Made by a program: the position numbers and the translations under genes. The notes under the pieces were generated by a model. It worked only from the letters and a program-made list of their open reading frames with translations. It was not told where the DNA came from and did not search any database. From the sequence record MK250021.1: 64,000 nucleotides of DNA. One strand, written 5' to 3'. Positions 18,808 through 56,871 of this stretch are shown in pieces (the stretch's first letter is position 1; the number at the start of each line of letters is the position of its first letter).

Positions 18808-18808
18808 A

Positions 18809-18815: not shown

Positions 18816-18841
18816 TAAAAAGAAATTTAAAACAAATAAAC

Positions 18842-21800
18842 ATGGCAGGATTTATGGATAACAAATATGGTTCACATGTTCCACCTGTTGGACTTAATGG
18901 TTTCAATAAAATATGTTTTACTGATTAGAAAGAAGCTGAAACTATGTTATTGGATAAGCCGTTAATGCCTGGCTAGCTCACATTCGCATATTACTATGAT
19001 AATGTTGCGACTAATGGTGTAAATGTAATGGCAGCAGTCGGAACATTAAAAGGAGAAGGTTCAAACCATATTTTTGTTAGTTATGAAACTATAAATTAGT
19101 TAATTGATTCCATTGATGATTCATTTGAAGATTTCGATACTAGTTTAATATATATTCGGAAAGAACTTATGAGCAAGCTTTCTGCTCTTGAAGATGAACA
19201 GAATAATTTAGTTTTACAGATAAGAGATAATGTTAATAATTCTAATGTAAGTTTTAACGAAATTTATACTAAATTAGAAGAGTTAGAAACAAATGGTAAA
19301 CAATATACAGATGAGAAAATTCAAGAGATAAGAGATTATGTCGATACATCTGTAACAAGTAAAATCAATGATTATGAAACAGTAGTTTCTGATATGATTT
19401 TAGATGCGTCTACAAAATTAGATTAGATGCAAAAAGATTTTGAAGATAAAGCTTAGGATATTCTTGATCGTAGTAATGAAGTATATGACAATCTTGATGT
19501 TTCTCTTCGTAATTATGTTAATAATGAAATGTTAGGAATGCAACAGTTTGTTCATAACGAAACAACACAAGCCGTTTTAGATATGAATTCAAAATATGCG
19601 GTTTTAAAGAAAGTTGTTGCATCTATTAATTCATCTGTTAATGATATTGATAAAAAACATAATGATAAGGAAACAGAATTATCAAGAAATATTGTAGAAA
19701 CAGCAACACAATTAACAGAAGACTTAGAAATTGCAAATGTTTCAATCATTAGTTATATTGATCAATAGACATCATTATTCAATAAGAAGATTGATAATAA
19801 AATCAATGAGCTTGAATTTAATACAAAAACTAAAAATATAGATTTAACAAATATCGTAGAAGAATACCAACATTCAGTTAAGAATGATATTGCTGTATTC
19901 AATGCATCTATGAGAACATATGTTAAATCTAGTCTTGCCACAGTTCAAACAGATGCTAATTCAAAATATTCAGAATTAAAAACTTATGTAACATCAAATG
20001 ATGCTTCATTATTAAATTATGTTAATGCAATGGAAATTGCACAAAAGACATATATTAATAAACATGATTCTGAAATCAAATCTTGGATTGCAACATCAGA
20101 TACTTCTTTATTCAATATTATTCGTTCAACAGATAGTAAATTAAAAGATGATCTTGACGCGATGGATGCAAGACACCAATCAATGTATCGTACAGTCGAA
20201 TCACGTCTTGATAACCTTATTGATGATATTTCTACAGATCTTACTATCATGGTTAATGAATACGGTAAGGAAGTTAAAAACTTTACACGTAAACATGTAA
20301 ATGATTTAGAGAATAAAGTTAAAGCACAAAATGTAAGTTTAATTAACTATATTGATGATAAATCTCAAGAAGCAGTAAATGAAACTCGTTTACTTAATGC
20401 TTCACTTAGAACTCAATTAAAGAATACAACAAACTTACTTAACGCAAGTATCAATAATGCTATTCAATATACAGATGATGAAATATCTAAATTAAAATCA
20501 TATGTTGATACAGAAAATACTTCTATTATTACTTATGTTAATAATCAAGATGATAAAGTAAGATTCTATGCAGATTATGGAGATAATGAAGTTCGTAAAT
20601 ATATTGATGAACTTGAAGAGCAACTTAAGAAATATTCTATTACTGGTGATTCTTCTGTTATCAATTATATTAAGTTAACAAAAGAAAATATTGAACAATT
20701 TGTTAAAGATGCAGATGATGATGTTTTAAAGAAAGCATATATTCATGATGATGAAATCAAAAATGAAATGACAACTGAATATAATGCATTTGTTCGTAAG
20801 CAGAAAGATATTGATGCATCATTATTAAATTATGTTAAGAATACAGATACTTCATTATTTAATTACATAAAGGATAGAGATGAACAAATAAAGAGATGGA
20901 TTGCTATTGGTGATACTTCACTTTATAACTATTTCAAAACATAGAATGCATCTTTGTTTAATTATGTAAAAACATAGGATACAGAAATATAGAATAATCT
21001 TGTTAATAGTGTTTCTAAGATAGAAAATGATATGGCAAAATTCGAGACCAGTATCAATTCAAAGATTGATTCTGCTGATATTGCTCTTGATAATAAATTA
21101 AATGCTAATAATGCTTCTATCTATACAATTCTTTCTTCTAATGATGTATCAATCATGAGTGCAGTTAATAAGAAAGATTATGAACTTGAAACAAAATTAA
21201 ATAATCAAATTTCAGAAGTAAAGAACGAATTAGAAACAAAAGACTCTTCTATTCTTAATTATGTATTGAATGCTGATACATCTATTAAATCACAACTTAA
21301 TATAATTAAAGATACTATTAATAATGATATTAAAGTATCTCTTAAAGAACTTGATACAAAAGTGGATGTAAATGATGCTTCTATTATATCTTATATTAAT
21401 ACAAATGACCATAAGATTGGTTCTTATATTGATACAGAAATTAATCGTGTAGAAAATCATTGCAAATCAAATGATACATCTGTTGTTAATTTTGTAAAAA
21501 AAGAAGATTCATCTATAGTTAATTATGTAAATGGTACAGTTAAACAAGAATTACTTGATAGAATTAATGATACAAATACATCTATTATTAATTATGTTGC
21601 TGAGAATTCATCATTGTTCAATTATGTCGTTAATAATGATACTTTACTTAAAGCACTTATTGAAAGTAAAGATGGCTCAATTTTGAATTCATTAACAAGC
21701 GCTGATGCTTCTATTATTCGTTTAATTGAGAAATATAACTCAGAATTACATAATAAGATTAACGCAAATGATTCATCTATTAACTCAAAAGTTGATAAGT

Positions 21801-24800
21801 ATAATTCATCTACATTTAGCCACTTTACATTAAAAGATGCAGAACTTCAATCTAAACAAGAATTAGCAGATACTTCTATTGTTAATTATATTAACACAAC
21901 AGTATCTGACATGAATACAAGTATCAATGAGACTTTAACAAATATTGATAATAAAGTTGATAATGTAAAATCTGATTTAGTGAATACCATTGAAACAAAC
22001 AATACATCTATTGTTAATTTTGTTAAGTTACATGATACAAGTATTGAGAATATGATTAAGTCTAATGAAGAAGTTTATAACTATATCAATACACAAGATA
22101 CTTCTATCATTAATTTCATTAAAAATAACAATACTGATCTTGATAATAAACTATCAAGAGTTAATACTGATGTTAACAATAAGATTGATAATGTTGAATC
22201 AGATCTTTTACAGGAAATTGTTAATAAGACAAATATACTTAATACTGATGTAAGACGAGAAATAGCTAATCTTTCTGATTAGATGAATGATTCTGATACT
22301 TCTATCCTTAATTATCTTAAAGCATCTGATAATGAGTTAAACAATAACTTATTGCAATTAGATACAAATCTTCATAATGAGTTAGATAATAATAAGGCTG
22401 AATTAACTAATAGTATTAATAATGCTATTACTGCTTATGAGAATAAACAAACAGAATTCTAGTCTAATATTAATAATCAAATTGATACATTTAAAACAGA
22501 AGTATCTACAAATATTGATACATTAAATTAGACTATCCATAATGATATGTCTGAGTTAAGTTCTGATATTAGTACAAAGATTGCTGTTACAAATTCATCT
22601 ACTATTAATTATCTTCAAAATGAAATTTCAAAGATTGATAATAAAGTTAATAACTAGAATTCTTCATTATCTGTAGCATTTGAGAACTATAAATCCGCAA
22701 CAGATACAAGTATTAAGAACAAATTAGATTCATTTGAAACTAATGTAGATAATAAGTTAAATGATAAATTTACAGAACTTAATATCACATTAGATACAAA
22801 CTGGACTAATTTGATTAATTCTAATGAGCAGTTTAAGAATGAAATTCATAATGATATTGCAAATCTTGAGACTAATACAAACAATAAGTTAAATGATTTT
22901 AAATCTTACGTAGATGAGCAGAATACATTACAGGATGTAAAGAATACATCTGCTATTAGTTCACTAAGAACTGATATTTCAACATTGGATGATTAGATCA
23001 ATACAAGATTAACACTTCACGAAAAGTTATGCGATAATAATATTCAAATTGCAAAGAATGAATTATCATCAAAAATTGAAACTGTTAATACATCATTAAT
23101 TAATTATATCGATTAGCAAGATACTAATATTAAGAATGAATTTGCTGAACGTGAATCAAATCTTCTTAATTATATCAATAGTTAGGATAATGAGCTTAAC
23201 AGAAAGATTGATAGCGTTAATCATGATTTAACAGAAACAATTACAGATGTTGATCTTCGCGCAACTACTAATATTAATAATCTTCGTACAGATATGAATT
23301 ATGAAGTATCACGTCTTGATAAGAAGATTGAAGATACTGAAAGAGATATTAGAACAGATGTAAGTACAGAAGATAAAAAACTCGATGATAGAATTACATC
23401 AGTTGACCATGACATCCGTCAAGATATGAAAACAAAAGATAATGATTTACAACAACAAATAACAGATGTTAGTAAAGATTATCGTAAATTTGTTATTGAT
23501 TCATCTAGCATGATTACAAAACATATTGAGAATGTTTCATCTAATATTCATTAGAGAATAACTGATACTTCTGAATGTTTATGGCAATATGTAAATGATA
23601 CATCTGACGCTATTGTTAATTATTTCAAGAAACAAAATACAGATCTTAAAGATTATTCTGATACAGAAGATAATAAATTAAAAGGTAGAATTGAAAATGT
23701 TTCATCTAAGTTAATTAATGTTAGCAACGCATTGAATAAACTTATTGGTGTTGGAGACGTTACTTCTGCTATTGATACATTCCAAGAAATTGAAGAGTTC
23801 TTAAAAACGTATACAAATAAAGATACATTAACAAATTTATTAAAGAATAACTCTGATAATGACAAAGCTTATGCAGATAGTATATTACAAAGATATGATG
23901 AATATATAAAGAATTATATTTCTGATGGCTCTACTGATATATATAATTATATTAATAACACTTCATCTGCAATTGTTTGGTGGGTATAGGATATTTCTAA
24001 TAATTTTAAGAATTATATTGATGCAAGTGACCTTATTCTTGATGGTAAGATTAGTGAATTAAGAGAAGACCTTAATACAACTAATGATAATATTGATGAT
24101 TTAAAAGATTATGTAGATCAATAGGATAGAAAAGATAGAGATTATGTTGATGATATATCCACAAAAATTGTTACATATATAAATTCTACTTCTGATGGTA
24201 TTGTTAAGAACTTTAATGATACTTCTGATGGTATTGTGAGACGTTTTAATGATGCTTCTGATGGTTTATATAATTTTATTATTGATACATCTAATCGTAT
24301 TGTTAATAACTTTAATGATGCTTCTGATGGTTTATATAAATTAATATTAGACACATCTGATGATATTGTTCATCATTTTAATGATGTTTCTACTCTTATT
24401 GTTAGAAGATTTAATGACGCATCTGACGGATTATTCCACTTAATTATGGATACTTCTAACATGATTATACATCGTTTAAATGATGTATCTGATGGTATTG
24501 TTAAGAACTTTAATGATACTTCTGACGGTATTGTCAAACGTTTTAATGATGCTTCTGATGGATTATATGCATTAATAAAAGATTTATCAACTCGTCATAA
24601 TGAAGATAACACTTTAATGCAGTCATATATCAATACAGAAATAGGTAAAGTAACCGATTCTTTAAATACTGAAGTAATACAAATCAATAAAAATATTGGT
24701 ACAATAGACAAAAAATATGAAGGGAAATTTAAGACTTTATATGAAAATGATATTGCAGACATTAATTCTTCTATAACTAATATTAGAAAAGAATTTGTAA

Positions 24801-26842
24801 CGGCTGATTATAATTCTAGCACACAAATTTATAATTATTTAAAGGAAACGTACAAGAAAGAACTTACTGGAGAAATAAGTAAAGTTGATAGCAAGTTAAC
24901 AAATTATATTACGTCTAATGATAAAAAAGTTAGTGATCTTGATACTAAAATTAATAGCGTAAACTCTGATATAACAACTTTGATTAATTCAAGTTATAAT
25001 GAAATTAATGGATATATTAATGATATAAGTACTCGTCTTGATAAAACTGATAAACGTTTAGATGATAGAATTACAGAAATTAATAACACATTAACAAACT
25101 CTATTCAAACTAAACATGATACATTAGATGGACGTATTACAAAAGTTGATACTGATTTAAAAGAAAGTATTAAATCAAAATATGATTTGGTTGATGGACG
25201 TATTACTACTGTAAATGAAAATATTATTAAACGTATAGATCAATATAATACATCATTAGCAGATTATACAGACCAAGAAATCAAAACAGTTAATAATGCC
25301 ATTAATAAAGTTAAATCTGATTTAACACAAGAGATTACTAATAATGTAACTAATATTGATAGTTCTATTACACGTATTGATAATTATCTTGAACGAGGTT
25401 ACTGGACAAAAGTTACTAATTATGTTGGTGGTGAAATAACAAAAGTTGATGAAAAGATTACTAATCTTAAATCTGAAATCAATAATTCATTATCTAAAGA
25501 TTATGTAACAAACGCATCACTTAATGATTATTATAATAACACTATTAAAAAATATGTTGATGAGCAAGATGCATTATATAATACATCCGTTATAGATATA
25601 TCTAATAGATTAAAGACAACAAATGATAATATTAAATCATTAAATGATAAATTAACTGCATTAACATCTGATAATATTGATGGAACTATCAATACATATA
25701 AAGAAGTTCAAGATTTCTTAAACTCTATATCTGATACTACTACGCTTGTAACATTATTAGCAAATAATAAAAATCAAGCTATTGAATCTGCTAATCAATA
25801 TACAGATAGTTCTATAAATAATTTCAAGAATACATATGTTAAACCTAAATTTGATAATTATGATAATTCAATATCTACAATAAATGGTGACATTAAAAAT
25901 ATTAATGGTAAAATAACTACTAATCAAACTGATATTACAAATCTTACTACCAGAGTAAATAAGGCAGAAACTGATATTAAAAATATTGATGGCAATATTT
26001 CTACTATTACTACTGACATAAATAAGTTAAAAGATTTTCAAACTACTGTCAATAATAAGAATTATTTAACAGAAATTACTGTTGCTAATGATAACAAATT
26101 AGGTGGTATTAAAACTGGTTATACGCCAACCGGCGCAAATGCAAGTAAGCAATTACCAGTAACATTGAATTCTGACGGTCGTGCATATGTAACACTTACA
26201 AATTCAGCGGTCACAGGAGCATATACTTATACATTACCAACAGCAAATAATTCTGAACTTGGTGGAATCAAAACTGGATATACTAATAATGGTAATAAGG
26301 TCAAAGTTGAAGTTGATGGTTCAGGAAATGCATATGTTGCTCTTACTGAAACAGCAGTCAAAGGCGGATTTACTTATACATTACCTACGGCTGGTACAAC
26401 AACTCTCGGTGGTATCTGCACAGGGTATACTAATAGTGGATCAAATGTTAAGGTTCAGATGAGTGGTAATAATGCATATGTTGGTATTACTAAAGATGCT
26501 ATTGTTAGCGCTCTTAGTTATACACCTGCAAAAGGTAATTCAGATGGCTCTAATACGTATACATTACCTAAGGCAACAGGTTCAACATTAGGTGGTATTC
26601 AAGTAGGCTTTACACAAAGTACATCTGGTTCAACACTTAATCTTCCTGTTAAATTAGATTCAAATGGTAATGCTTATATTAGTATTAACTTAACTGATTT
26701 ATAGAATATTGGTGTAATAACAAATAATAATATTAATTCACATGTAACATAGGTTATGTCTGATGACACTGCATGGGTTACTCAATCTCAATATGGAAAT
26801 ATCACAGATAAAGGTAGTAAAACTTATTACATTTATGAATAA
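18842..26842 (+). CDS. Very long coiled-coil fibre protein, paralog 3 (2666 aa), with C-terminal fibre repeats
   Basis: One frame from ATG 18842 to TAA-TAA 26840 with only TAG internally. Shared N-domain (PG(TAG)LTFAYY.D), two IDTFxEI..FL-type motifs, four YTLPxA..LGGI repeats, and C-terminal WVTQSQY..ITDKGSKTYYIYE typical of phage fibres. Confidence 0.8.
24182..24577 (+). repeat. Twelve 33-nt (11-aa) tandem repeats, consensus NDxSDGxxxxF
   Basis: Exact 11-codon period read directly. Units 1-3 and 10-12 are near-identical 99-nt blocks. Confidence 0.9.
26063..26690 (+). repeat. Four ~40-55 aa repeats (Y/F)TLPxA...LGGIxxG...xGNAYV
   Basis: Seen in the translation of the 24236 ORF: NKLGGIKTG, SELGGIKTG, TTLGGICTG, STLGGIQVG. 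Confidence 0.8.
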
Positions 26843-32348: not shown

Positions 32349-35300
32349 TTATGCATTTTTAAAGAAACCGTCTATTGTAGTATTTTTAAAATAGAATGTA
32401 ACTCTACCTTGCATAGGCATATTATTACCGTAATAATTATTGTTTGTATTACCTGATCTATTTGGTTGATGAACACCTCGTTGTTGAGTAACAGCTCTAT
32501 TACCTGGTTGAACAACTTGATGTTGCTATGTATTACCTTGTGACTTATTAGTATTACTTGGTGTATTTGTAGTAATAAGGTCAAGTAATTCTCTAATACC
32601 ATCAAATCTACTAAGAATCTTATTCTCATCAAGACTTTCAAACGCAAATCGCATTCTATCTACTGCAGTCGCTATATTATTAACTTTATTAGCAAACTCT
32701 TGCAACGCTTGATTACGTTTCTTTTCATTATTAATAATCTAATCATCTAATGCTTTAAGCGCTTTACGAGCAGATTCAAGCTTTGTCGTATATATTTCTA
32801 CTTTAGATGTTGTTACCTAAATCTAAGATGTAAATGTTTTTAACCTTGATGTATAAGTTCTTAATGAACCAGAAGTTACGTTCATATTTCTGTTTATTTC
32901 AGGAGACGTTAATCTCTTTATATTATTAATGAACATATCAATATGAAGGCCTAACTATTTCTAACTATTCATTTCTCTTGAAAGATATATCATCTTCTCT
33001 GCAATTTCAAGATAAAGATCCATAAACTAACCTGTTGTTTGAAAATTAACTTTTTCTGAATTATTAGATAATGATCTCATCTATGATTCCATCTTTGTTA
33101 ATACAGTTCCGAACTAAGATACAATGGATGATGGTTTAACTTTATCATTATATGTAAGTTGATTTATAATCTTTCTATATACACTGGCAATCTGATAAAC
33201 GCCATCTACGAATTTCTTTGCATCTTTTGTACTCTATATAGATGTTTCGAATATCTTACTTGAGTTACTGAAATATGTTGCTAACTATGTCAATACAGAT
33301 GTAAATTTAGTCGCAACTTCACTACCTTGTGATAATACTTTCCCTTGATCATCTGTCATCGCTTTGATAATTTTAGATAAAGAATCTACTGATTTTTTAA
33401 TAGTTCCCATTACCTACATAACTATTTTTGCAGTTGATTGAATCTTATTATATTTCTCCATATTTTCTTTAGTAGAAAGATTATCAGAAATAATAGTAAT
33501 AAAATCTACAAATGCATTAGCGATATTTTTAGATATTGTTCTAATAAAATTAGGTTGTAAACACAAATAATCTTTAGACTATGCCGTTGTTCCTTTCTTA
33601 TTAGATGTTAATCCTAAGAATGGTTTTAATGTTGCTGAGAAATTTTTAACTGCAGTCATTATAGGATTTATAGTATTCTTTATAATATCTGCTATTGATT
33701 CTGCTTTTTCTATAAAACCTTCATTTGCAAAACTTTGTACAAGATAATTTATAAATTCTACAAACATTCTGCCAACTTCTCTTGCAGCCTATGTAAATGC
33801 TCCTTTTTTAAGTTTCTTAGTAATAGGTATTAATTTACCATCTTTATCTTTTTCATAATGATCTACATAAACGCCGGTAGCTAACTTTAATATTGCATCT
33901 ACATATTTTCCTAATCCTTCCATAACAGGTCCAACAGAACCACCTATTGCATTTAATGCATCCTCTGTTTTATTTCCCCAAAAAGAACCATGTCTTTCAA
34001 ATACTGTAACTAACTCATCTATAAAAATACCAAATGTAGTTGCTACCGAAATAGCTGCATTTAAGAAGTCATCCGGTGTTACTTTAGCTAAATGTGGAAC
34101 TGTATAATTACCGTCTTTATCTTGCATATAGTAATCTGTATATGTTCCTGTTGCTAGTTTCATTATTGCATCAACAAATTTACTAACACCATCCATAATA
34201 GGCATAATAGAATCTTTCATTGCATCCATTGCCCATATCATATTAGGTTGTAATTGTTTAAATGATGTCCCAAGCTATTCTATAAAATTACCAAATGAAG
34301 CTGATACAAATATAGCAGATGTAAAGAATATAGAAGGGTCAACCTCTTCATATTCAGGTTTACCATTTTTATCATATCCTGTTACTATTTGCATCGTTGC
34401 AACTTTAATAACTGTATCAACAAATTTAGAAACTGCATCCATAACGGGTTCCATTACCTATCCAACAGTAGATATTGCTAACATTGCATTAACTGACATC
34501 TTATCAAACGCGTCACTTAAACATTGTAAAAATATGCTAAACTATACAGATATAGCAAGAGCTGCGTTACTAAATTCTGTTGCTGTTAATTTCTTATATA
34601 TTGGGTTCTTCTTATTATCATATCCTATAATATATGTTCCTGTTGCTAGTTTCATTACAACATCTACAAATTTTCCAACAGTATCAATAATAGGATTAAG
34701 CGCTAATGTTAACACGCTTAATACAACAAGTTTTAAAGCAACCATTGCGTTAAATCCGGCACTTAATTTAGAAATAAATGTTGTAAATCCATTTGTAACT
34801 GCTTCTGCTGCCTATTCAAATACAGTTGCTGGTAAATGTTCATACATAGGTTTACCATTATCATCATATCCTGCTATATAATTCATTGTAGCAACTTTCA
34901 TTATAATATCAATATATTTTGATATTGTATTTAATATAGGTCTTAATGCTAATGAAATAACTAATGCCATTGCAGTTCCATTAAAACCGCTAAATGCTTT
35001 AACAATAGCTTGCATAGATCCTAAAACACTATTTTTATCATCATTACCTTTACCTATCATCAATTCAGAAAATGTTTGAATCATCTTAGCATTACATATT
35101 TCTGTTATATATTTCATCTCAGAAACAGTTAATGCTAATACACCAAATACTGCCATAATAATAGGTGAAAAAGCTGCTGCCGCTGTTGCCTATACCATCT
35201 ATACAGGATTTGGAGCTGCTGCTTTTATAACATCAAACATTACTTCAAATAATGTTACTGCAGTCTCCCCTGTTTTTTTAAGTTTCTCAGTATTATATGG

Positions 35301-38300
35301 TAACATTAATTCCAACGCTTTCATGAATAATATCATGGTTCCTGTTACAACAGTCATCACACCTGCAATTGCCGTCATTACTACAGCACCTAATGTAATA
35401 AATGGAAGAATAGGCGTCATCGCACCTAATGCAGTCATAAATGTTCCCATAATAGTTAACAAACCTATCATTGTAGCTGCACCTAAAAATACTGCGCCAC
35501 CTTTATTTAAATCATCAATTTTCTTTGCTTCCCATGCGAATAAAACCATTGTTCCTCCAACAATATCCATCACTGCACCAATAGCGGACATAACAATACC
35601 ACCTATAATAGTATCTGGTAAAAATTTCTCTAATTTAGAAACACCGTACATTACCAAACCCATTAGACCTAAAACACCTGCCATAACAGCAGCACCTAAA
35701 AATACTGCACCACCTTCATTTAATTCTAATATTTTCTTAGATTCTATTGCAAATGCTAAACATGCAGTCCCTATTACTAACATAACTATTGCAACTGCAG
35801 TCATAATAACTGCACCAACTGCTAATTCAACTGCATACTTATCTGCGAATTTTCCTATAAAGAATAATACAGTTCCAAATATCGCTAATGTTCCTATCAC
35901 AACACCTGCACCTATTAATGCGTCGTCCCACATTTTACCAATAGGAATCAATATATCTTTAACAATCAATGATATACCTAATAAAATAAATGCCATTGCC
36001 GCTGTTGCAAATATTGCATATGCTGCTTTCTTACCATCTACTTTAGCCAAGAAATAAGTACCTGCAATAAGAGTAATAATAATGAATAATGTAATACCCA
36101 TTCCTATACCTGCTTCTTTACCATTCTAACCTATAGGAATAAGTAAATCTTTTGTAATCAATGCAATACCCATATAAATAATTGCAAGAGTAGCAGTAGC
36201 AAGAACACCCCATAAGGCTTTCTTTCCATTTACCATATTCAATACATAAACGCCTGCAACTAATCCTGCTATTATAAACATTGTTACTATTGCACCTAAA
36301 TAAACTTCCGGCGCTTTCTTTCCAATAGGTATTAAAAACGCAACAGATATAATAGCAACCAATGCAAACACAGCAGATATTTTAATAAGATTATTTACCC
36401 CTCTATCTATACGTTTACCATGTTTATCTAATGATTTAACTGCAAATATGCCTAATGCTATAATAAAAGATATAACCAACGCACCTTTTGATACATCATC
36501 TAATCTCTTGCCAATAGGTGCCAATAATGTTGCTGACACCAAAGCTATAATTGCAAATACAGCAGAAATCTTTAACATTGCATCTGTAGCGTATGTTAAT
36601 TTCTTATTACCTATTTTAGACAATTTATTAACAATGAAAATAGTTCCTGCAGTAAATAATGTAAGTATTCCTATAGATGCAAGTATAGTTTCCGTACTAT
36701 TATTTTTAACAGTTAACGATAATAATAACATTGATACAGATAATGACATAATCATTATTCCAATACCAGTTAAAACACCCTGTACATTTTTAAGGCTCTT
36801 ATCTAATTTCTTCTCTGATAAATCTTCTATCAAACTCTTAAATCCAGAAACAGCAACTCTCATAACAATTAAACTTGCTACAACTGCAGTTAATCCAACA
36901 ATCTTAGTTACAATAGATAATCCTATAATAATACCGCCTATCATACCTATTGCTGAACTTAAACTTCTTATTATCACCTATGCTCCTTTTACATCTTTAA
37001 CTTTTAATTTTTTAGCTAAATCTGTAATAGTATTCTTCATGAATTTAATCAAATACCTAACTACTAAAACAGATTCAATTATTGTTTTAAAAGATGTTAG
37101 CTTAATAGTTAATGCAATGAATACAATACCGTATAATAATGTTTTCAATGCATTATTCCATGCATTCATAAAAGATGATAAAACTTTAACTTGTTTTACA
37201 TCCCATTTTTCTTTTAATATTGTGTTAAAGAAATCTACTATTTTCTATGCACGTTTCTGTGTTAATGATTTTACAGCAAACATGAAATTAAGAATCTATA
37301 TCTTCTTAATATCAAATATTACATTTAATAGCTATACCATACTATTAACAGTTTGTGCAACCGTTTTATTATCTGGTATTTCCGTTGCAAATGCGACAAA
37401 GAAACTCGCAAGCATTTTAGCAGTAATAGGATTCAATACCTTCATTACTTTAAATATAGAAAACTTCTATTCAGGATCTGCTATCTTTACTAAAGGATCT
37501 AATATACCACCAATATATTTAACGTTCTCACTTATTTCTTTTCCTTTTAAATATTTAGCGATCTATCCTATGAACTAACCTAATTGTCTGCCTAATAACC
37601 AACCTCTTATAGGATTAAGACTTATCTACATTTTAAAAACATTTGATGTTACCAATGCGGATAATCCTCCCATCAAGTCTCCAATGGGTTTAATTATTTT
37701 TTGAATATCTTTATTTTTTAATTTCGTTTTACTAATAGACGAAACTAATGCAGATATAAATTTGCCTAAACGTTGTGCAGTTTTAACATCAAGCTTCCCA
37801 ATATTTTCCTATAACTTAATCATATCAAGAGCAACAAGTTTGGACATTGTTTCAACAACTGCTTTAATTATACCGACACTTCGTCCTACTGATTTAGAAT
37901 TCTATATTGTTAACCCTTGTATAAAATCAACTATTTTTTTTGCGCCTTCTGCATTTATTTCTGTCATTTTATTAATAGCTTTCAGAAAACTATCAATATT
38001 TGTAAATGTATTGTCATCAACTTTAAGACTTGATAAAACTGTATTTACATTTCCTATAGATGTGGCAACTTTATTCAAAACATCATTGTCAATCTATTCC
38101 ATGGATACAAGTCCTTTTGACAACTTCTCCAACTATTCTCCAACAGTTGCTGCTGATTCCTCTTTAGCAGTCTCAACGATACCCTATAACAAACTGATTA
38201 TAGTAGAATCAGCTTTCTGTTCAATAGTTTCTTTCTTTTTCTCCTATTGCTGACTTACCATAGTGTCCAAAATATTAAATATACCGTTAAGTGCTTCTTC

Positions 38301-38318
38301 TGAAGACATTTGTGCCAT
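32349..38318 (-). CDS. Tape-measure-like protein (1989 aa)
   Basis: One frame from ATG 38318 to TAA 32349 with ~35 TAG. Long Ala/Gly/Ile/Leu-rich amphipathic and hydrophobic helical repeats; the length and composition fit a tail tape measure. Confidence 0.7.
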
Positions 38319-38341
38319 ATCGTTTTAATGTAATTTAATTT

Positions 38342-38701
38342 TTACTTAGATGTTGTTTTCTTCTTCTGAACAACATAAACAGATTTATCTTTTAATGATT
38401 TTACTGTATATATAATACCGGAGTTTTTATCATATAATGTTCCATATTCATAAGCCTTATTATTGTCACCATCTTTAATAGATGTTTTTATCCATTTATC
38501 ATATTGAGGTAATGAATCTGACATAATTAAAGAATCTAATTGAGTAGAATTTAATGTATCATTATTCATTGTACGTACGGATGTAATAGCAACTGAATAT
38601 ACAGAATCTTTTACCTAATTATTATTCTTTGTACCACATGAATTAAATGATACCATAAGGCTCAATAAAGAACCAACTAAAATATACTTTAAACTTTTCA
38701 T
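38342..38701 (-). CDS. Putative lipoprotein (119 aa)
   Basis: Reading through one TAG gives MKSLKYILVGSLLSLMVSFNS-C, a signal peptide II-like N-terminus with a lipobox Cys. Confidence 0.65.
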
Positions 38702-38749
38702 ATTTTAAGTTTATTTAACTAAATATTTAATATATTTATTTTTAGAATA

Positions 38750-43057: not shown

Positions 43058-43495
43058 TTACTTATCTTTTTCTTCTGCATCTACATATTTCCAATACTGT
43101 TCTATTATCTTATTCCATAATAATTCATATGAAAACCCATAATTATTATCAGGTCCAAATACTTTCATTTCATTTGAAGTAACCACATAATTGATTTGAT
43201 ATTTTCCCCTTTTTATTTTAAAAAAATTATCTTCATTTAATTCGTCTGAACCAGTATAACTAAATATTCTAATATTATAATGTTTACTTGATGTTATATG
43301 AACGCATGCATATAAATATGGTTGATAGTTTATTTTATATACATAATATGTATTTTCACAAATTTTATTAAATAGCCATTGTATACATTGTACATCACAA
43401 AAATCCGGTATTTCTTTATTAAATGGTGGAAATACAATATTTTCATCCATTACAGGCTTATCTTTTTTCTTAAATATGTTATTAAACAGTTTCAT
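43058..43495 (-). CDS. Hypothetical protein (145 aa)
   Basis: Intact ORF. Confidence 0.7.
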   Translation of the reverse strand: MKLFNNIFKKKDKPVMDENIVFPPFNKEIPDFCDVQCIQWLFNKICENTYYVYKINYQPYLYACVHITSSKHYNIRIFSYTGSDELNEDNFFKIKRGKYQINYVVTSNEMKVFGPDNNYGFSYELLWNKIIEQYWKYVDAEEKDK

Positions 43496-43498
43496 TAT

Positions 43499-44167
43499 TC
43501 AATCTTTAATAATTTTTAAATCATCTGGTATATAACAATCACTACCTAAATATTTAATATATTCTTTAACTGGTTTCTTTACTTTTTTCCAATATAGTAA
43601 GTTATTATCTTTGCTTTGATAATATATATAACTATCAAAATATGTTATTTCTTCAATATTTCCATTATGTTCAACTTTACATACTTTATAATTATCTTCA
43701 TCGAAATAACTTGCAAGATCCATCCATACTAATAAATCTTCTAATATCATTATTGACAACGGTGAAGTGTTATATGTATTAGTTTTTTTCTTTTCATATA
43801 TAATATTTCCATTATTATCTTTCAATACTGTTAATCCTTTATAATCACCTGTAATTTGCCAATTTGGATTATCAATAAAATATTGTAATAAAAATTCTAA
43901 TGGTTTTCGCTCGTCTTGGTTTATAGAATAATCTATTGAAAAATTATATTCACTAAACCTTAAATTATCTTCTATACATTGTCGTATGTCTATAGCAAAA
44001 TGTTGCTTCTAATCATGTGTTAATGTATAATATTCATATTTAGCAATATTTAATGCATGTTGATGTGCGGCTATTGTATGTCTACCAATTGCATATCTAT
44101 ATGACATCCATACTAAATCTTCATGATAACTTTTATCAAATATATTATCCTAATCTTTTTTCTTCAT
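43499..44167 (-). CDS. Hypothetical phage protein (222 aa; WMSYRYAIGRHT motif)
   Basis: The track ORF (TTG 43825) extends in frame through 2 TAG to ATG 44167. Confidence 0.7.
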
Positions 44168-44223
44168 ATAAAATAAAAAAGTCTATTTATAATTATATAA
44201 AAATATACATAAGTTGTTTATTA

Positions 44224-44230
44224 ATAAATA
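44224..44230 (+). promoter_or_regulatory. Putative late promoter ATAAATA
   Basis: 26 nt upstream of ATG 44257. Confidence 0.4.
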
Positions 44231-44256
44231 TAATAAATAAAAATAAACTAATTATC

Positions 44257-45160
44257 ATGAAATTCATTAAATTATTTGATAATAAAGAATAGTTAGATAA
44301 TTATGCCAATGGAATTTCACATCGAGATGGTGCATTTATACTATCTGAAAAAAAAAAAAGAGAAACTAAGTATTATTGATGAAAGACATCCAGGTCCAAA
44401 CTGTATTTATGTATAGGATTTAAATATGTCTCCATTATCATTAGAATCAAATTCGTCGAAAGATGTAAAAGTTGGCTCAATATTATATGTAAACACTAAT
44501 AATAAGTTAACATTAAATAATGAACCTGGTAATATGGCAATTGCTATATGTGTATGTCCATCAGTTACAGAAGATTTTGAAGCTGGTAATTCAACAGGTG
44601 AAAGTAAAGTAAAAACTGCACGTTTTTGTAGTCTTTACTATATGAATTAGGATATAGTAGGTACTGCTAGTATTAATGATACAACAGTATAGTTTAATAT
44701 GAAAGGATATACTATAGGAAATACATATGGTAATAGATCTAGTACTAGTTATATTGGTGGTAAAAAAAATACATAGATATTAGTAGAAAAATCATCATAT
44801 TATTATGATACTAAAAGATTATTATGTAATATATCATTTTCTAATATTTATAATGGTGTTTTTCTTGGCTGTAATGCTGCAGTTTCTGCTGCTGTATATA
44901 GTATACGTGGTACAAAAAGAGGTGATTGGTATTTACCATCAGTGGGAGAATTAAAAGAGATGTATAGTAAAATTTCCATAATCAATCCTATTAGAAAACA
45001 ACTAGTTAATGAAGAATACAAAATGTAGGGGCATTATTGGACAAGTTATGAATATAATGCAGACAATGAATCTGCAATATTATTCACCAATGGTGCTATA
45101 ACATATGCTGATAAAAAAATGAGTAAAAGAGTAATACCATTTTTAGCAGTTTCTATATAA
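44257..45160 (+). CDS. DUF1566/C-type-lectin-fold protein, frameshifted in an A12 tract (300 aa if A11)
   Basis: The MKFIKLFDNKE(TAG)LDNY... frame hits TGA at 44377. The frame after A12 (44348-44359) stays open with 5 TAG to TAA 45158 and contains GDWYLPSVGEL...HYWTSYEY...VIPFLAV. Confidence 0.7.
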
Positions 45161-45165
45161 AATAT

Positions 45166-45200
45166 TAAGGTGATAATATTTTTGAAATATTATCACCTTA
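45166..45200. terminator. Bidirectional intrinsic terminator
   Basis: 16-bp perfect stem TAAGGTGATAATATTT/AAATATTATCACCTTA. Confidence 0.85.
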
Positions 45201-45206
45201 TTTAAT

Positions 45207-45887
45207 TTACTTCTTATATAAAATATTATCAATCATTCCTTTAGAACCATATGATTTTGCTTCTTCTGCTGTCATCCAAAAATCTCTATCTGCATCAGAT
45301 TTAATTTTTTTCATTGTTTGCCCAGAATGATTTGCAATAATATCATAAAGTTCTGTTTTTAACTTATTTATTTCTTTACATGTAATTTCTATATCACTTG
45401 CTTGGGTATGATCTCCAGTAGATGACATAGGTTGGTGAATCATTACACGTGAATGTGGTAATGCGTATCTCTTTCCTTCAGTTCCTGCACAAAGTAATAT
45501 ACTAGCCATACTAGCTGCCATACCGGCACATATAGTAGATACATCAGACCTTATAAATTGCATTGTATCATATATCTCTAATCCTGAATATACATCACCA
45601 CCTGGTGAATTAATATAAATAGAAATATCAGTATTATCTACATTATCAAGATATAATAATTGAGATGTAATAATATTAGCACTTTCTGCTGTTACAGGAT
45701 TACCTAAGAAAATAATTCTATCCATCATCAATCTTGAGAATACATCCATTTGTGATACGTTAAGTTGTCGTTCCTCAAGTATAGTAGGATTTTGATAACC
45801 CATATTTATACCATTCATATAATCATGTAAGTAAAGACTACTTACATTTCTTGAATTCATAAACTTTTCAAAATCAGTTTTAATCAT
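45207..45887 (-). CDS. clpP: ATP-dependent Clp protease proteolytic subunit (Bacteroidota-type)
   Basis: EERQLNVSQMDVFSRLMMDRIIFLG, YINSPGG, GMAASMA (Ser), MIHQP (His), DRDFWM (Asp). Confidence 0.95.
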   Translation of the reverse strand: MIKTDFEKFMNSRNVSSLYLHDYMNGINMGYQNPTILEERQLNVSQMDVFSRLMMDRIIFLGNPVTAESANIITSQLLYLDNVDNTDISIYINSPGGDVYSGLEIYDTMQFIRSDVSTICAGMAASMASILLCAGTEGKRYALPHSRVMIHQPMSSTGDHTQASDIEITCKEINKLKTELYDIIANHSGQTMKKIKSDADRDFWMTAEEAKSYGSKGMIDNILYKK

Positions 45888-46380
45888 CTATATTATAGTA
45901 TTTCTTTCTAAAACATTTTTTTAGTAATGATACAACATGAATATTAGGAAATTCACAAGGATTATTAGGATTTGTTTCATTATAAATATCGGGATAACAA
46001 TCTAATATAAATTTAACAACTCCTTGAGATCTAGATACTCCAGCTGAACAATGAACATAAATATCTTTTCCTAAATTATTCTCTATAAAATTAAATAATT
46101 CATTTGCTTGATTATCTGTTAATCCTTTAATTGAATTTGCATATTTAATTTCATCTTCTGTTATATCATCTCCATATGCATATAATAAATTATAATCTGT
46201 AATATCATAAAAGTCTAAATTAATAACATTATCTCTTGATTTAAATATATGATATTCATCTTTTGCATTTGGTTCACATATAGATATTATTGCTATATTA
46301 TCTGGTAATGTATTGTTATCCCATTTATTTTTATTCATTAACGATTTAAATCCGTCAAATCCTGTACACCAAATTTTCAT
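45880..46380 (-). CDS. Cys-based protein tyrosine/dual-specificity phosphatase-like protein
   Basis: P-loop VHCSAGVSRS (HCxxGxxR). Confidence 0.8.
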   Translation of the reverse strand: MKIWCTGFDGFKSLMNKNKWDNNTLPDNIAIISICEPNAKDEYHIFKSRDNVINLDFYDITDYNLLYAYGDDITEDEIKYANSIKGLTDNQANELFNFIENNLGKDIYVHCSAGVSRSQGVVKFILDCYPDIYNETNPNNPCEFPNIHVVSLLKKCFRKKYYNIDD

Positions 46381-53331: not shown

Positions 53332-53376
53332 ATAAAGGTGATATAAGAATAATAAAACTTATATCACCTTTATTTT
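53331..53376. terminator. Bidirectional intrinsic terminator
   Basis: 17-bp stem AATAAAGGTGATATAAG/CTTATATCACCTTTATT between convergent genes. Confidence 0.85.
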
Positions 53377-53651
53377 TAATTATCGTTCTTTTCTAATTCC
53401 TTATTAATATAATCCATATCTTCATCTGTTAAATCGCCAAATGATGTGAATAAATCTTTATTAATAAGTCCATATCTCATAAGATATGCTAATGTCATTC
53501 TTACAGCATAATCTGCAATATCATAAGTTGTTGTAACTTCTAAATTTTGTAAATCTGGATTATTACCAACTACATTAGAAACTTTATCAACAATCTTATC
53601 ACATGTTTTTTTCATTGAATTTAATTCATTATTTGTTAATTTGGTACTCAT
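53376..53651 (-). CDS. Hypothetical protein (91 aa)
   Basis: Start reassigned to MSTKL (ATG 53651), since the longer track start runs into the terminator at 53715. Confidence 0.6.
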   Translation of the reverse strand: MSTKLTNNELNSMKKTCDKIVDKVSNVVGNNPDLQNLEVTTTYDIADYAVRMTLAYLMRYGLINKDLFTSFGDLTDEDMDYINKELEKNDN

Positions 53652-53706
53652 AATATCATTAAATAATTTAATTATTATATTACAACGATATGCATAAAGT
53701 TTAGAA

Positions 53707-53749
53707 ATAAAAAATGAGTTATTAGACTTATGCACAATCTAATAACTCA
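53707..53749 (-). terminator. Intrinsic terminator closing ncRNA candidate B
   Basis: 12-bp stem TGAGTTATTAGA/TCTAATAACTCA plus T-run on the - strand. Confidence 0.75.
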
Positions 53750-54815
53750 CAAACACTTTATTCTAAATTTATTATATTTACATCTTATTTAAAGATGTCC
53801 CTCATGTTGTTATTCGTACGAACATAAGTTTCTGCCTCTTATGATTCACTTTAACGTTTGCCCGTTATATAATGAATGTTCATACTGAACTTCGTTATGT
53901 CCATAAGGACAAATGGCTGAGAACTTGACCAACACCTACTCTCAATGCTGTAACGTTGGAGTTACATGTTCACACAACTCTTATTTCTAAGAGGTTGAGA
54001 GCATACCCACGACTTTTGTAAAAAATCGTAAACTCTTACTTGATAGGTTTCATAGAAATTCATTTCATACCAACTTCCTTGGAAGGATTCAATGTGTCCC
54101 CACATTTAGCACGATACTACTCTTACTATTCTCATGTCTTTCCTTGCGGTACTCGAATCATGTCTACATATTACAGTAGAATAAGGGTATTTTAACCACC
54201 AAGTGTCGCACACTTTTGCTTATACATAATTATATGTTAAATAAAATAATTTCCAATATTATTATTCTTATTATATATTCTTTAGACTTGAAAGACGAGG
54301 TGCGACCAATAGCATTTCTTCCTTTTGAGAAGAACCCACTAAATCGCCTTTCTGAAATTTCGTTACACCAATGTAACCATATTTCTACTCTTATAACTTA
54401 CCTATTGTTTTTCAATAGTAATCTTACCATTTCTGAACAAGTTACCAGCTTGTATAAATTATTTGGTTTATAATTTATATAAGATTCATTATAACAATTA
54501 ATATTAGCACTGGGAATTGGTATTCCGATCACTAAATATCCATAAACTTAAACTTCTATTGTATTACTACTCACATCAGTTGTCTATCAAACTTCCAATG
54601 TATATAAACTTCATCTCAGGAATTATCCCATCAATTTCCCATTTATACAGGCACTTACTAAGTTTGGTTTTCTGTAGAATGCTCATTATTCATAAACATC
54701 GATAAACATGTCTACTGTTTACCTTTATCACATCACTGCTTTATCCTTACCCCACCGAAACCATGGGTTTATATTTCAAAGAACTCATCTTGAATAAAAT
54801 AAATTCATTCAAATT
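53707..54815 (-). ncRNA. Candidate long structured ncRNA B (~1.1 kb, possibly two modules)
   Basis: No credible ORF and visibly more G+C than the flanks. GNRA-capped hairpins on the - strand (GCGA 54201-54215, GGGA 54091-54106, GAAA 53978-53993). Tandem promoters, boxA-like GTTCTTTGAAAT and a terminator. Confidence 0.55.
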
Positions 54816-56437: not shown

Positions 56438-56871
56438 NNNNNNNNNNNNNNNNNNNNNNNNNNNNNNNNNNNNNNNNNNNNNNNNNNNNNNNNNNNNNNN
56501 NNNNNNNNNNNNNNNNNNNNNNNNNNNNNNNNNNNNNNNNNNNNNNNNNNNNNNNNNNNNNNNNNNNNNNNNNNNNNNNNNNNNNNNNNNNNNNNNNNNN
56601 NNNNNNNNNNNNNNNNNNNNNNNNNNNNNNNNNNNNNNNNNNNNNNNNNNNNNNNNNNNNNNNNNNNNNNNNNNNNNNNNNNNNNNNNNNNNNNNNNNNN
56701 NNNNNNNNNNNNNNNNNNNNNNNNNNNNNNNNNNNNNNNNNNNNNNNNNNNNNNNNNNNNNNNNNNNNNNNNNNNNNNNNNNNNNNNNNNNNNNNNNNNN
56801 NNNNNNNNNNNNNNNNNNNNNNNNNNNNNNNNNNNNNNNNNNNNNNNNNNNNNNNNNNNNNNNNNNNNNNN
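56438..56871. other. Assembly gap (434 N)
   Basis: Run of N. Confidence 1.

What the first reader, a model, noticed from the sequence alone, without database searches (positions are those of the whole stretch)
44257..45160. Lectin-fold (DUF1566-like) gene under a possible double lock: A12 frameshift plus TAG codons
The 5' part (MKFIKLFDNKE...) and the long downstream frame join if the A12 tract (44348-44359) loses one A. The C-terminus is the WYLPSxGEL...YWTS fold often diversified by DGRs in Bacteroidota phage adhesion proteins (established). It is an antisense island with its own late-like promoter and a 16-bp terminator. Inference: a phase-variable or slippage-controlled host-binding protein. 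A homopolymer sequencing error is equally possible.
Basis: partly seen in the sequence, partly recalled or inferred. Interest (0 to 1): 0.65.

Follow-up and report, generated by a model that had tools for sequence, protein, structure and literature searches.

The report
Poly-A-switched lectin gene of Lak megaphage
A small lectin-like accessory gene of the gut megaphage Lak-B is broken in this copy by one extra A in a 12-A run, and that run is 9 to 12 A long in near-identical phages (about half in frame, half not), so it looks like a natural on/off switch and not a sequencing error or a dead gene.

Summary
The window is Prevotella megaphage Lak-B2, a genome that reads TAG as glutamine. ATG 44257 opens a 30-codon N-terminus. 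An A12 run (44348-44359) throws it out of frame with a 266-codon body ending at TAA 45160. The joined gene has six in-frame TAG codons.

Uninterrupted homologues in Lak-A and Lak-C, and a Lak-B paralogue, show the two halves are one gene and that A11 is the in-frame length. The run is the only indel in 2.6 kb among nine Lak-B genomes (A9, A10, A11, A12). Dozens of public assemblies, some at 600-2200x depth, carry A9-A12 on the same haplotypes. Sequencing error is therefore unlikely.

Both halves are under purifying selection (dN/dS 0.06 and 0.17). Long A runs are avoided elsewhere in the window. The protein has a DUF1566/Lcl_C lectin-like C-terminus and a hypervariable loop between two cysteines.

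No reverse transcriptase, template repeat or C-terminal variability exists, so the DGR idea fails.

Best reading: a slipped-strand phase-variable accessory gene that probably binds glycans. TAG decoding is a genome-wide condition, not a lock specific to this gene. Read-level and RNA-level proof could not be obtained.

The parts
44210..45149 (+). Lak-B-specific inserted cassette (island) between the 222-aa gene and clpP, both on the - strand
   Evidence: blastn against the syntenic Lak-A2 locus aligns 43466-44209 and 45150-46000 only. In Lak-A2 the two flanking genes are 55 bp apart.
44224..44237 (+). Conserved upstream motif ATAAATATAATAAA (TATAAATA-like), 20 nt before the ATG; possible promoter element
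   Evidence: The same motif lies at -33..-20 in the window, L033, L035, the Lak-A1/A2/C1 homologues and the Lak-B2 paralogue, within otherwise unrelated upstream DNA. Its count in the window is not above chance. Function is inferred.
44257..44346 (+). N-terminal coding segment (30 codons, frame 1), begins MKFIK; contains TAG 44290-44292
   Evidence: Homologous to the N-termini of uninterrupted Lak-A/C genes and the Lak-B paralogue. Family-invariant M1, F7 and H22, and near-invariant D24-F27, lie here. dN/dS is 0.06 against L033.
44348..44359 (+). A12 homopolymer, the switch; A11, or A8 as seen in one clade, is in frame; A12, A10 and A9 are out of frame
   Evidence: Only indel among nine Lak-B genomes. 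Lengths 9-12 are confirmed in 16 further loci. It is the longest run in the window by 4 bases.
44377..44379 (+). TGA that ends the 40-aa truncated product of the A12 allele
   Evidence: The same 40-aa peptide (P0125) was called on 17 public contigs.
44360..45160 (+). Body of the gene (266 codons plus TAA), frame 2, five in-frame TAG codons (44414, 44648, 44690, 44774, 45026)
   Evidence: 203 homologues of about 300 aa on Lak-type contigs. dN/dS is 0.17 against L033. TAG 44774 aligns with a near-invariant Gln of the family.
44762..44769 (+). Second A run (A8) inside the same gene, invariant among the nine Lak-B genomes
44825..44872 (+). Loop bracketed by two cysteines (C-x14-C), hypervariable among close orthologues; a three-allele site at 44847
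   Evidence: Alignment of island orthologues. SNPs 44843 and 44847 are both non-synonymous. AF2 pLDDT is below 50 at residues 182-202.
44915..45133 (+). DUF1566 / Lcl_C-like lectin-fold domain (GDWYLPS motif at 44921-44941), highly conserved
   Evidence: Pfam PF07603 E=7e-5, 23.5 bits, below the 34.9 cut-off. Foldseek hit to 8q4e, Lcl C-terminal domain, E=8e-4. DUF1566 phage proteins are top hits in BFVD.
45166..45200 (.). Perfect 16-bp inverted repeat with a 3-nt loop, between the convergent gene and clpP; bidirectional terminator-like
   Evidence: Hairpins follow the stop codon in L033 and the Lak-A1 homologue as well.

Best explanation
The gene is a functional accessory gene of Lak-B megaphages. 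It encodes a 300-aa protein with an N-terminal beta domain, a hypervariable loop between two cysteines and a C-terminal DUF1566/Lcl_C lectin-like domain. A poly(A) run of Lys codons sits in a poorly conserved hairpin turn 30 codons into the ORF. The run gains and loses A's by slipped-strand mispairing during phage DNA replication. A11 (or A8) gives the full protein. A12, A10 and A9 give a 36-40-aa stub. The Lak-B2 copy in this window is an OFF allele (A12). Phage populations therefore hold a mix of ON and OFF genomes, as at a contingency locus. Expression of ON alleles further requires amber suppression (TAG=Gln), like most Lak genes, so the protein is made only once the phage's tRNA-CUA is working. 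Shown: the anatomy, the run-length polymorphism on identical haplotypes, purifying selection, and the fold. Inferred: that switching is adaptive, that the protein binds a glycan on the Prevotella surface or in gut mucus, and when it is expressed.
For: (1) One gene. Lak-A1/C1 homologues and the Lak-B2 paralogue are uninterrupted and begin with the same N-terminus. Family-invariant residues lie on both sides of the run. (2) Hypermutability. Among nine Lak-B genomes the run is the only indel in 2.6 kb, against 16 SNP sites. Each of three near-identical haplotype groups holds more than one length: 12/11; 11/10; 11/10/9. (3) Census. 300-aa ON forms exist on the NS, DT and NI haplotypes, NI being the window's own (P0122, P0127, P0131). 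OFF stubs exist for A10 (P0123, 24 or more contigs), A12 (P0125, 17 contigs) and A9 (P0132). About half of the alleles are OFF. (4) Not error. A10 appears in a 605x assembly and A11 in a 2248x assembly. A coding in-frame A9 run is identical in the four Lak-B genomes where it was found. A non-coding run ranges over A6-A9, lengths that Illumina reads accurately. (5) Functional. dN/dS is 0.06 (N-terminus) and 0.17 (body) against an orthologue at dS 0.5-0.9, comparable to clpP at 0.06. In-frame length variants A8 and A11 occur in one clade (P0133, P0129). (6) The run is exceptional. No other Lys triplet in the window uses AAA three times. (7) Fold. AF2 gives pLDDT 80.7. Foldseek hits a Bacteroides ovatus fimbrial protein (4eps, E=2e-5), the Lcl C-terminal domain (8q4e, E=8e-4), and DUF1566, tail-fibre and collagen-like phage proteins. 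(8) The genome reads TAG as Gln. Giant ORFs carry up to 43 TAG codons, a tRNA-CUA is present, and this is published for Lak phages.
Against: There are no read-level data. The only runs found are Logan contigs that do not span the run, so mixtures within one sample and a switching rate are not shown. The gene is dispensable for the lineage as a whole. The island is absent from Lak-A and Lak-C. One relative has lost the 5' 220 nt together with two upstream genes (L034). One A10 allele also has ATG changed to ATA. One A8G allele has a second frameshift. These are what neutral decay would also produce. Binding function and virion association are untested. The Pfam score is below the curated cut-off.
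Confidence: 0.6

Rival explanations
1. Neutral mutational hot spot in a dispensable, recently acquired gene. The run slips because long A runs slip. Nothing selects for switching, and OFF alleles are simply the first step of gene loss.
For: Unconstrained A runs elsewhere in Lak-B also vary: intergenic A10-A12 and non-coding A6-A9. The island is missing in Lak-A and Lak-C. Secondary lesions occur in OFF lineages: start codon loss, a second frameshift and a 5' deletion. About half of the alleles are OFF.
Against: dN/dS of 0.06-0.17 over dS 0.5-0.9 shows long-term purifying selection on both halves. ON alleles persist on every haplotype. The phage interrupts every other Lys triplet with AAG yet keeps a pure A run here, across clades with A8, A9, A11 and A12. 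No ON allele carries another lesion.
Confidence: 0.22
2. Expression-level slippage. RNA polymerase stutters, or ribosomes slide, on the A run, so that all alleles give some full-length protein. The DNA length then sets dosage and not on/off.
For: An A11 run drives productive transcriptional slippage in C. rodentium tssM1 (PMC4256274). Ribosomes slide on poly(A) Lys tracts (PMC4363877). In the same phage a head-closure gene (PHROG 218) is split by a T14 run that is out of frame in all six Lak-B genomes checked and in Lak-C1. This suggests the phage tolerates or uses slippage.
Against: All three frame classes are common and no length is conserved, unlike programmed sites. T15, the in-frame length, also occurs at the head-closure run, so that case may itself be polymorphism or under-calling. 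No RNA data are available.
Confidence: 0.13
3. Sequencing or assembly artefact. The true length is A11 everywhere and A12 in this window is a homopolymer miscall.
For: Long homopolymers are error-prone. Raw reads could not be inspected. The T14/T15 ambiguity at another run shows that very long runs can be called differently.
Against: Four lengths spanning 3 nt recur in assemblies from different pipelines (curated GenBank genomes, SPAdes and MEGAHIT-style ENA assemblies, Logan, IMG/VR) and at 74x, 605x and 2248x depth. A12 is found on two different haplotypes. A more distant orthologue has A9, and another has A8 followed by G.
Confidence: 0.04

Closest known systems
Hypermutable polyG tracts in receptor-binding-protein genes of Campylobacter Fletchervirus phages (Sorensen et al. 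2021, Cell Rep 35:109214; cited in PMC10877375)
   Same: A homopolymer inside a phage gene for a probable binding protein changes length by slippage. This creates ON and OFF subpopulations of an otherwise identical phage.
   Different: Here the run is poly(A) made of Lys codons, in a 25% GC, 550-kb TAG-recoded megaphage. The protein is a small DUF1566 lectin-like accessory protein that has not been shown to be a tail fibre. No phenotype or read-level switching is shown.
Bacterial contingency loci (simple-sequence phase variation in Haemophilus, Neisseria, Campylobacter; established knowledge, text)
   Same: The run sits near the 5' end of the ORF, frame-changing length polymorphism occurs on identical backgrounds, the product is a surface-interaction type of protein, and the gene is otherwise conserved.
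   Different: The carrier is a lytic phage genome and not a cell. Switching must occur during phage replication and acts on the burst population.
Transcriptional slippage at the A11 run of Citrobacter rodentium tssM1 (PMC4256274)
   Same: An A run of the same size in a coding region separates two frames of one protein.
   Different: There the DNA length is fixed and the ratio of the two products is functional. Here the DNA length itself varies among all three frame classes.
DGR-diversified C-type-lectin / DUF1566 target proteins (e.g. Bordetella phage BPP-1 Mtd, PDB 1yu4)
   Same: Same broad fold class at the C-terminus, and a role in ligand recognition is plausible.
   Different: No reverse transcriptase, no template repeat and a conserved C-terminus. 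The Foldseek match to Mtd is not significant (E=1.2). Variability lies in a different loop, between two cysteines.
Legionella Lcl C-terminal domain (PDB 8q4e) and Bacteroides ovatus fimbrial protein BACOVA_04982 (PDB 4eps)
   Same: Best structural matches, at E=8e-4 and 2e-5. Both are parts of adhesive surface proteins.
   Different: Sequence identity is only 15-23%. The Pfam score is below the curated cut-off. The ligand is unknown.
TAG-to-Gln recoding of Lak and crAss-like phages (Borges et al., bioRxiv 10.1101/2021.08.26.457843)
   Same: The gene needs amber suppression, as in the published model of code-dependent expression.
   Different: Nothing new in this respect. In Lak phages most genes, including replication genes, use the alternative code (legend of Fig. 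S5), so TAG does not mark this gene out.

Membership tests
Slipped-strand phase-variable (contingency) gene | Homopolymer or short repeat inside the ORF or promoter whose length sets the reading frame | tested here: met
   A12 at 44348-44359, 30 codons after the ATG. A11 joins the frames.
Slipped-strand phase-variable (contingency) gene | Frame-changing length polymorphism among otherwise near-identical genomes, with ON and OFF on the same haplotype | tested here: met
   A9-A12 within three haplotype groups that differ by 0-1 SNP in 2.6 kb. ON and OFF protein forms exist for the NI, NS and DT haplotypes.
Slipped-strand phase-variable (contingency) gene | Gene otherwise maintained by selection | tested here: met
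   dN/dS 0.06 (N-terminus) and 0.17 (body) against clpP at 0.06.
Slipped-strand phase-variable (contingency) gene | Mixed run lengths within one population and measurable reversible switching | not testable with these tools
   Only Logan contigs were offered and none spans the run.
Slipped-strand phase-variable (contingency) gene | Phenotypic difference between ON and OFF variants | not testable with these tools
   Lak phages are uncultivated.
Pfam PF07603 Lcl_C (DUF1566) | Profile match above the curated gathering score | tested here: not met
   23.5 bits against a 34.9 cut-off, E=7e-5. Paralogues and homologues score 17.6-23.9 bits. Many database homologues carry a precomputed PF07603 hit.
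Pfam PF07603 Lcl_C (DUF1566) | Fold of the Lcl C-terminal domain | tested here: met
   Foldseek 8q4e_A: E=8e-4, prob 1.00, 88 columns, rmsd 3.7. DUF1566-annotated phage proteins are among the top BFVD hits.
Diversity-generating retroelement target gene | Reverse transcriptase encoded in the genome | tested here: not met
   PF00078 search of all 549,839 bp of MK250021.1, six frames: no match. Controls were positive.
Diversity-generating retroelement target gene | Template repeat matching the variable region | tested here: not met
   The DNA search with 44860-45160 finds only itself and a 33-nt stretch of the paralogue.
Diversity-generating retroelement target gene | Hypervariability at the C-terminal variable region | tested here: not met
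   The C-terminal 80 residues are nearly invariant, even in orthologues of 77-86% identity. There is one SNP (45148) among nine genomes.
Programmed transcriptional slippage or ribosomal frameshift site | Conserved slippery run with a fixed frame offset across relatives | tested here: not met
   All three frame classes are common.
Programmed transcriptional slippage or ribosomal frameshift site | RNA or protein products that differ from the DNA-encoded frame | not testable with these tools
   No RNA run holds the locus.
TAG=Gln (code 15) recoded phage gene | The genome shows the code: long ORFs open only with TAG as sense, TAG aligned to conserved Gln, a suppressor tRNA | tested here: met
   ORFs of 2881, 2685, 1992 and 1526 codons carry 43, 21, 35 and 18 TAG codons. 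TAG 44774 falls at a near-invariant Gln. tRNA-CUA lies at MK250021.1:415547-415618. Published for Lak phages.

The most novel reading that the evidence does not exclude
Lak megaphages use homopolymer slippage as a regular layer of gene control on top of stop-codon recoding. A variable poly(A) run toggles an accessory lectin whose cysteine-bracketed loop evolves fast, giving bet-hedging over host or mucus glycans. A long T14 run inside the essential head-closure gene is decoded by obligatory -1 slippage. Intergenic A runs tune promoter or RBS spacing. This would be the first contingency-locus system described in a huge phage, and the first built on poly(A) Lys codons.
Probability: 0.3. Interest if true: 0.75.

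Novelty: new member of a known kind. Interest (0 to 1): 0.58.

Why it matters
Lak phages are among the largest known phages. They are uncultivated, and how they recognise Prevotella is unknown. A gene that natural populations keep switching on and off, that stays under purifying selection and that carries a fast-evolving loop is a strong candidate for a host- or environment-interaction factor. That makes it a concrete handle for experiments such as glycan binding and adsorption. It also shows that phase variation by simple repeats, well known in bacteria and reported for Campylobacter phages, operates in AT-rich megaphages through poly(A) Lys runs. For annotators, frameshifted gene pairs at long A/T runs in these genomes should not be discarded as errors or pseudogenes.

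Tried and rejected
1. Read-level test. The look-up of sequencing runs returned three runs kept only as Logan contigs. Read laying placed four short pieces, none across the run. It gave no information either way.

2. DGR. The RT family search, the template-repeat DNA search and the variability test were all negative.

3. Alternative start at ATG 44303 in the body frame, which would need no frameshift for A12 or A9. Rejected as the native start. Homologues begin with the frame-1 N-terminus. SNP 44331 is synonymous in frame 1 and non-synonymous in frame 2 (plus reading). Frame 1 shows 9 synonymous against 4 non-synonymous changes. A truncated product from 44303 or 44426 in OFF alleles cannot be excluded.

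4. Sigma-70 promoter scan. 29 sites found against 25 expected, so it is uninformative in this AT-rich DNA.

5. Upstream motif count in the window. 3 found against 3.1 expected. Only its conservation among paralogues is suggestive.

6. Using the T14 run as a clean control for sequencing error. This was weakened when two IMG/VR contigs showed T15. The A9 coding run and the A6-A9 non-coding run remain valid controls.

7. Within-sample ON/OFF co-occurrence from contig look-ups. The sample lists returned did not overlap, and similar places are collapsed. Not informative.

8. The large all-against-all protein search, the ESM Atlas and complex prediction were not used, because the word search and family scans had already placed the protein.

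9. The structure was predicted for the natural A11 allele P0001 (99% identical) and not for a hand-joined window sequence.

10. The N run at 56438-56871 was left untouched.

Full report
IDENTITY OF THE WINDOW

The window is 100% identical to Prevotella phage Lak-B2 (MK250021.1, about 434001-498000), a 550-kb circular megaphage genome assembled from baboon faeces. GC content is about 25%. The genome itself shows that TAG is a sense codon:
- With TAA and TGA as the only stops, the window holds ORFs of 2881, 2685, 1992 and 1526 codons, with 43, 21, 35 and 18 in-frame TAG codons.
- A TAG of the gene studied here aligns with a near-invariant Gln of its family.
- The genome encodes a tRNA with anticodon CUA.
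- TAG=Gln in Lak phages is published.

I therefore read the gene with TAG=Q.

THE OBSERVATION

- ATG 44257 opens 30 codons in frame 1, with one TAG.
- The A12 run occupies 44348-44359.
- With A12, frame 1 stops at TGA 44377, giving a 40-aa stub.
- The body frame runs from 44360 to TAA 45158-45160, with five TAG codons.
- A perfect 16-bp hairpin follows at 45166-45200.

The run is not a chance product of AT-richness:
- A/T run counts in the window fall 106, 25, 4 for lengths 6, 7 and 8. There is nothing at 9-11, and then this single run of 12.
- The whole 550-kb genome has six A/T runs of 9 or more.
- Of 10 other Lys-Lys-Lys triplets in the window's ORFs, none is written AAA-AAA-AAA, although 76% of Lys codons are AAA (P about 0.004). 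Long A runs are avoided in coding DNA, and this gene is the exception.

ONE GENE, NOT TWO

- Lak-A1 and Lak-C1 carry 296-297-aa homologues (37-39% identity). They start with the same MKFIK N-terminus and run uninterrupted, with no A run, through the conserved ERHPGPNC motif.
- Lak-B2 has an intact paralogue elsewhere at 43% identity.
- In a 117-sequence alignment, invariant or near-invariant residues (M1, F7, H22, D24-F27) lie upstream of the run and many more lie downstream. The run falls in the least conserved, length-variable stretch.
- In the AlphaFold model that stretch is the turn between strands 25-31 and 36-42.
- An alternative start at 44303 in the body frame is therefore not the native start. 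A truncated product in OFF alleles cannot be excluded.

THE RUN IS HYPERMUTABLE AT THE DNA LEVEL

Across 2.6 kb, the nine GenBank Lak-B genomes differ at 16 SNP sites and by one indel, which is this run:

| Run length | Genomes |
|---|---|
| A12 | B2 |
| A11 | B1, B5, B9, B6, B8 |
| A10 | B3, B7 |
| A9 | B4 |

The SNPs define three haplotype groups, and each group holds more than one length. That implies at least four independent length changes on a very shallow tree.

Other assemblies add the following:
- A10 together with a start-codon change (ATG to ATA) on the window's haplotype.
- A12 on the B1-like haplotype.
- A11 in an ENA assembly.

The protein collection gives a wider census:
- Full 300-aa ON forms exist for the NS, DT and NI haplotypes. 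NI is the window's own haplotype, found in a 2248x assembly.
- OFF stubs of 36 aa (A10; 24 or more contigs, one from a 605x assembly), 40 aa (A12; 17 contigs) and 39 aa (A9) also exist.
- Run lengths were confirmed in the DNA of 16 loci: six with A12, five with A11, four with A10 and one with A9.
- Roughly half of all alleles are OFF.

More distant orthologues (86-87% aa identity) have A9, or A8 followed by G, which is the same out-of-frame class as A9. Both are OFF. Their clades also contain ON forms: P0135 has an interrupted run, and P0129 and P0133 have A11 and A8.

Controls from five other long runs in six Lak-B genomes:
- A coding in-frame A9 is identical in the four genomes where it was found.
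- An intergenic run varies A10-A12.
- A non-coding run varies A6-A9, lengths that short reads call reliably.

Run-length polymorphism is therefore real in these phages. It is seen where selection allows it. A pure sequencing artefact is very unlikely, at about 4%.

THE GENE IS MAINTAINED

Comparison of the window with the orthologue on contig L033, where both alleles are OFF:

| Segment | dN/dS | Note |
|---|---|---|
| 30 N-terminal codons | 0.06 | 9 synonymous, 4 non-synonymous changes |
| Body | 0.17 | |
| Neighbouring clpP | 0.06 | |

dS is 0.5-0.9. A pseudogene would not look like this. The gene must have been translated as one protein for most of that time.

The gene is also dispensable at larger scale:
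- The whole 940-bp cassette is an insertion that Lak-A and Lak-C lack.
- One relative has lost the 5' 220 nt together with two upstream genes.
- Two OFF alleles carry a second lesion.
- No ON allele does.

WHAT THE PROTEIN IS

- Pfam gives Lcl_C (DUF1566) at E=7e-5, below the curated cut-off. PHROG 4245 (unknown function) matches at 2e-9.
- The AlphaFold2 model of the natural A11 allele has pLDDT 80.7 and pTM 0.79.
- Foldseek finds a Bacteroides ovatus fimbrial protein (4eps, E=2e-5, 280 columns) and the Legionella Lcl C-terminal domain (8q4e, E=8e-4). Weak C-type-lectin-like hits follow.
- In the viral library the hits are DUF1566 proteins of crAss-like phages, plus tail-fibre, S74 and collagen-repeat proteins.
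- A glycan- or surface-binding role is thus a reasonable inference. It is not a result.

Among island orthologues the C-terminal lectin part is almost invariant. A 14-residue loop between two cysteines (44825-44872) is rewritten in every clade. It also holds the only three-allele site among the near-identical Lak-B genomes, and both SNPs there change the amino acid. That loop is modelled with low confidence.

DGR

- No reverse transcriptase anywhere in the genome.
- No template repeat.
- No variability in 45030-45157.

CASSETTE STRUCTURE

The motif ATAAATATA(A/T)TAAA contains a TATAAATA-like core. By established knowledge this resembles the T4 late promoter. It sits 20-33 nt upstream of the ATG in the window, its orthologues, the Lak-A/C homologues and the Lak-B paralogue, although the surrounding DNA is unrelated. 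Hairpins follow the stop codon in the window, L033 and the Lak-A1 homologue. The motif's count in the window is not above chance. The promoter role and its timing therefore stay inferred.

MECHANISM

Most likely (0.6): slipped-strand mispairing during phage DNA replication changes the run length. A11 (or A8) genomes make the lectin-like protein, provided amber suppression is active. A12, A10 and A9 genomes make a stub. Populations hold both forms.

Rivals:
- Neutral slippage in a gene on its way out (0.22).
- Expression-level slippage that rescues OFF alleles or sets dosage (0.13). An A11 run does this in C. rodentium tssM1, and ribosomes slide on poly(A).
- Artefact (0.04).

The 'double lock' wording overstates the TAG part. 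TAG decoding is the phage's general code, although this gene's TAG density (2%) is at the top of the range seen in the window.

COMPARISON AND NOVELTY

The closest described system is the set of hypermutable polyG tracts in receptor-binding-protein genes of Campylobacter phages (Sorensen 2021, cited). The next closest is bacterial contingency loci. This locus meets the sequence-level criteria:
- A run inside the ORF.
- Frame-changing polymorphism on identical backgrounds.
- Selection on the rest of the gene.

Within-population switching and phenotype could not be tested.

The two open Lak papers I text-searched contain none of the terms homopolymer, frameshift, slippage or DUF1566. I rate the finding a new member of a known kind. 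It is of moderate to good interest because it gives a testable candidate for host or environment interaction in an uncultivated megaphage.

SIDE FINDING RELEVANT TO MECHANISM

In Lak-B and Lak-C the head-closure gene (PHROG 218, TnsA-like N domain) is split by a T14 run.
- The 46 residues before the run match profile positions 3-34. The 139 residues after it match positions 34-143, in the -1 frame.
- The run is T14 in all six Lak-B genomes checked, in Lak-C1 and in four IMG/VR contigs. It is T15, which is in frame, in two IMG/VR contigs.
- Lak-A1 has no run and an intact gene.

Either an essential gene depends on -1 slippage, or very long runs are under-called. This needs reads.

LIMITS

No raw reads or RNA data were available. 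Contig counts in the census include the same samples assembled by different pipelines, so they are not counts of independent populations. The N stretch at 56438-56871 was not examined.

Noticed in passing
MK250021.1:225246-225259 (locus L023:1247-1260); outside the window: A T14 run splits a head-closure gene (PHROG 218, TnsA-like N). The upstream 46 aa match profile positions 3-34. The downstream 139 aa match positions 34-143, in the -1 frame. The run is T14 in six Lak-B genomes, Lak-C1 and four IMG/VR contigs, and T15 (in frame) in two IMG/VR contigs. Lak-A1 has no run. This is either obligatory -1 slippage in an essential gene or under-calling of a very long run.
   Followed up: partly
MK250021.1:346127-346198 (L068) and 415547-415618 (L063); outside the window: Besides the expected amber suppressor tRNA (anticodon CUA), ARAGORN finds a tRNA with anticodon UUA, which would read TAA. 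TAA is the main stop codon of the window's ORFs. The window itself has no tRNA gene.
   Followed up: no
MK250021.1:532065-532074 (L025:1066-1075); outside the window: An intergenic A10 run about 10 nt upstream of a gene start varies among Lak-B genomes: A10 in B2, B1 and B4; A11 in B7; A12 in B6 and B3. It may tune promoter or RBS spacing.
   Followed up: partly
MK250021.1:226577-226587 (L023:2578-2588); outside the window: An A11 run lies in the last codons of a 305-aa gene. It is A11 in B2 and B4. In four other Lak-B genomes it is a 10-nt interrupted run (A6-G-A3), which changes the C-terminal tail.
   Followed up: no
window 43499-44167 (- strand): The upstream neighbour is a 222-aa protein with two in-frame TAG codons and no Pfam or PHROG match. 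It is conserved in Lak-A2, where it lies directly beside clpP.
   Followed up: partly
window 45207-45887 and 45880-46380 (- strand): The phage encodes a ClpP protease (Pfam E=6e-71). It overlaps by 8 nt a 166-aa protein with a weak dual-specificity-phosphatase signature (E=1e-4, below cut-off).
   Followed up: partly
window 2-3577, 3670-12312, 12405-16982, 18788-26842 (+), 32349-38324 (-): Giant ORFs of 1192 to 2881 codons are open only with TAG as sense (15-43 TAG codons each). The - strand block 38.7-64 kb is mostly free of TAG.
   Followed up: no
L014:843-1319 and 2374-3264 (MK250021.1 about 118.7-121.1 kb): The intact paralogue of the studied gene lies between a phage-encoded SmpB (Pfam E=3e-55) and a protein similar to nucleoside 2-deoxyribosyltransferase (E=5e-42).
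   Followed up: partly
L034 (Logan SRR13434617 contig, 7773 bp): A relative at 77% aa identity has a deletion that removes the equivalents of window 43058-44470, that is two upstream genes plus the first 220 nt of the lectin-like gene. This leaves a 207-aa ORF that starts at an internal Met.
   Followed up: partly
window 38726-38739 and 53768-53781 (- strand): The only two other near-matches to the upstream motif ATAAATATAATAAA lie just upstream of small - strand ORFs that contain in-frame TAG codons (38342-38704 and 53376-53768). This may mark a shared promoter class.
   Followed up: no
   Followed up: no
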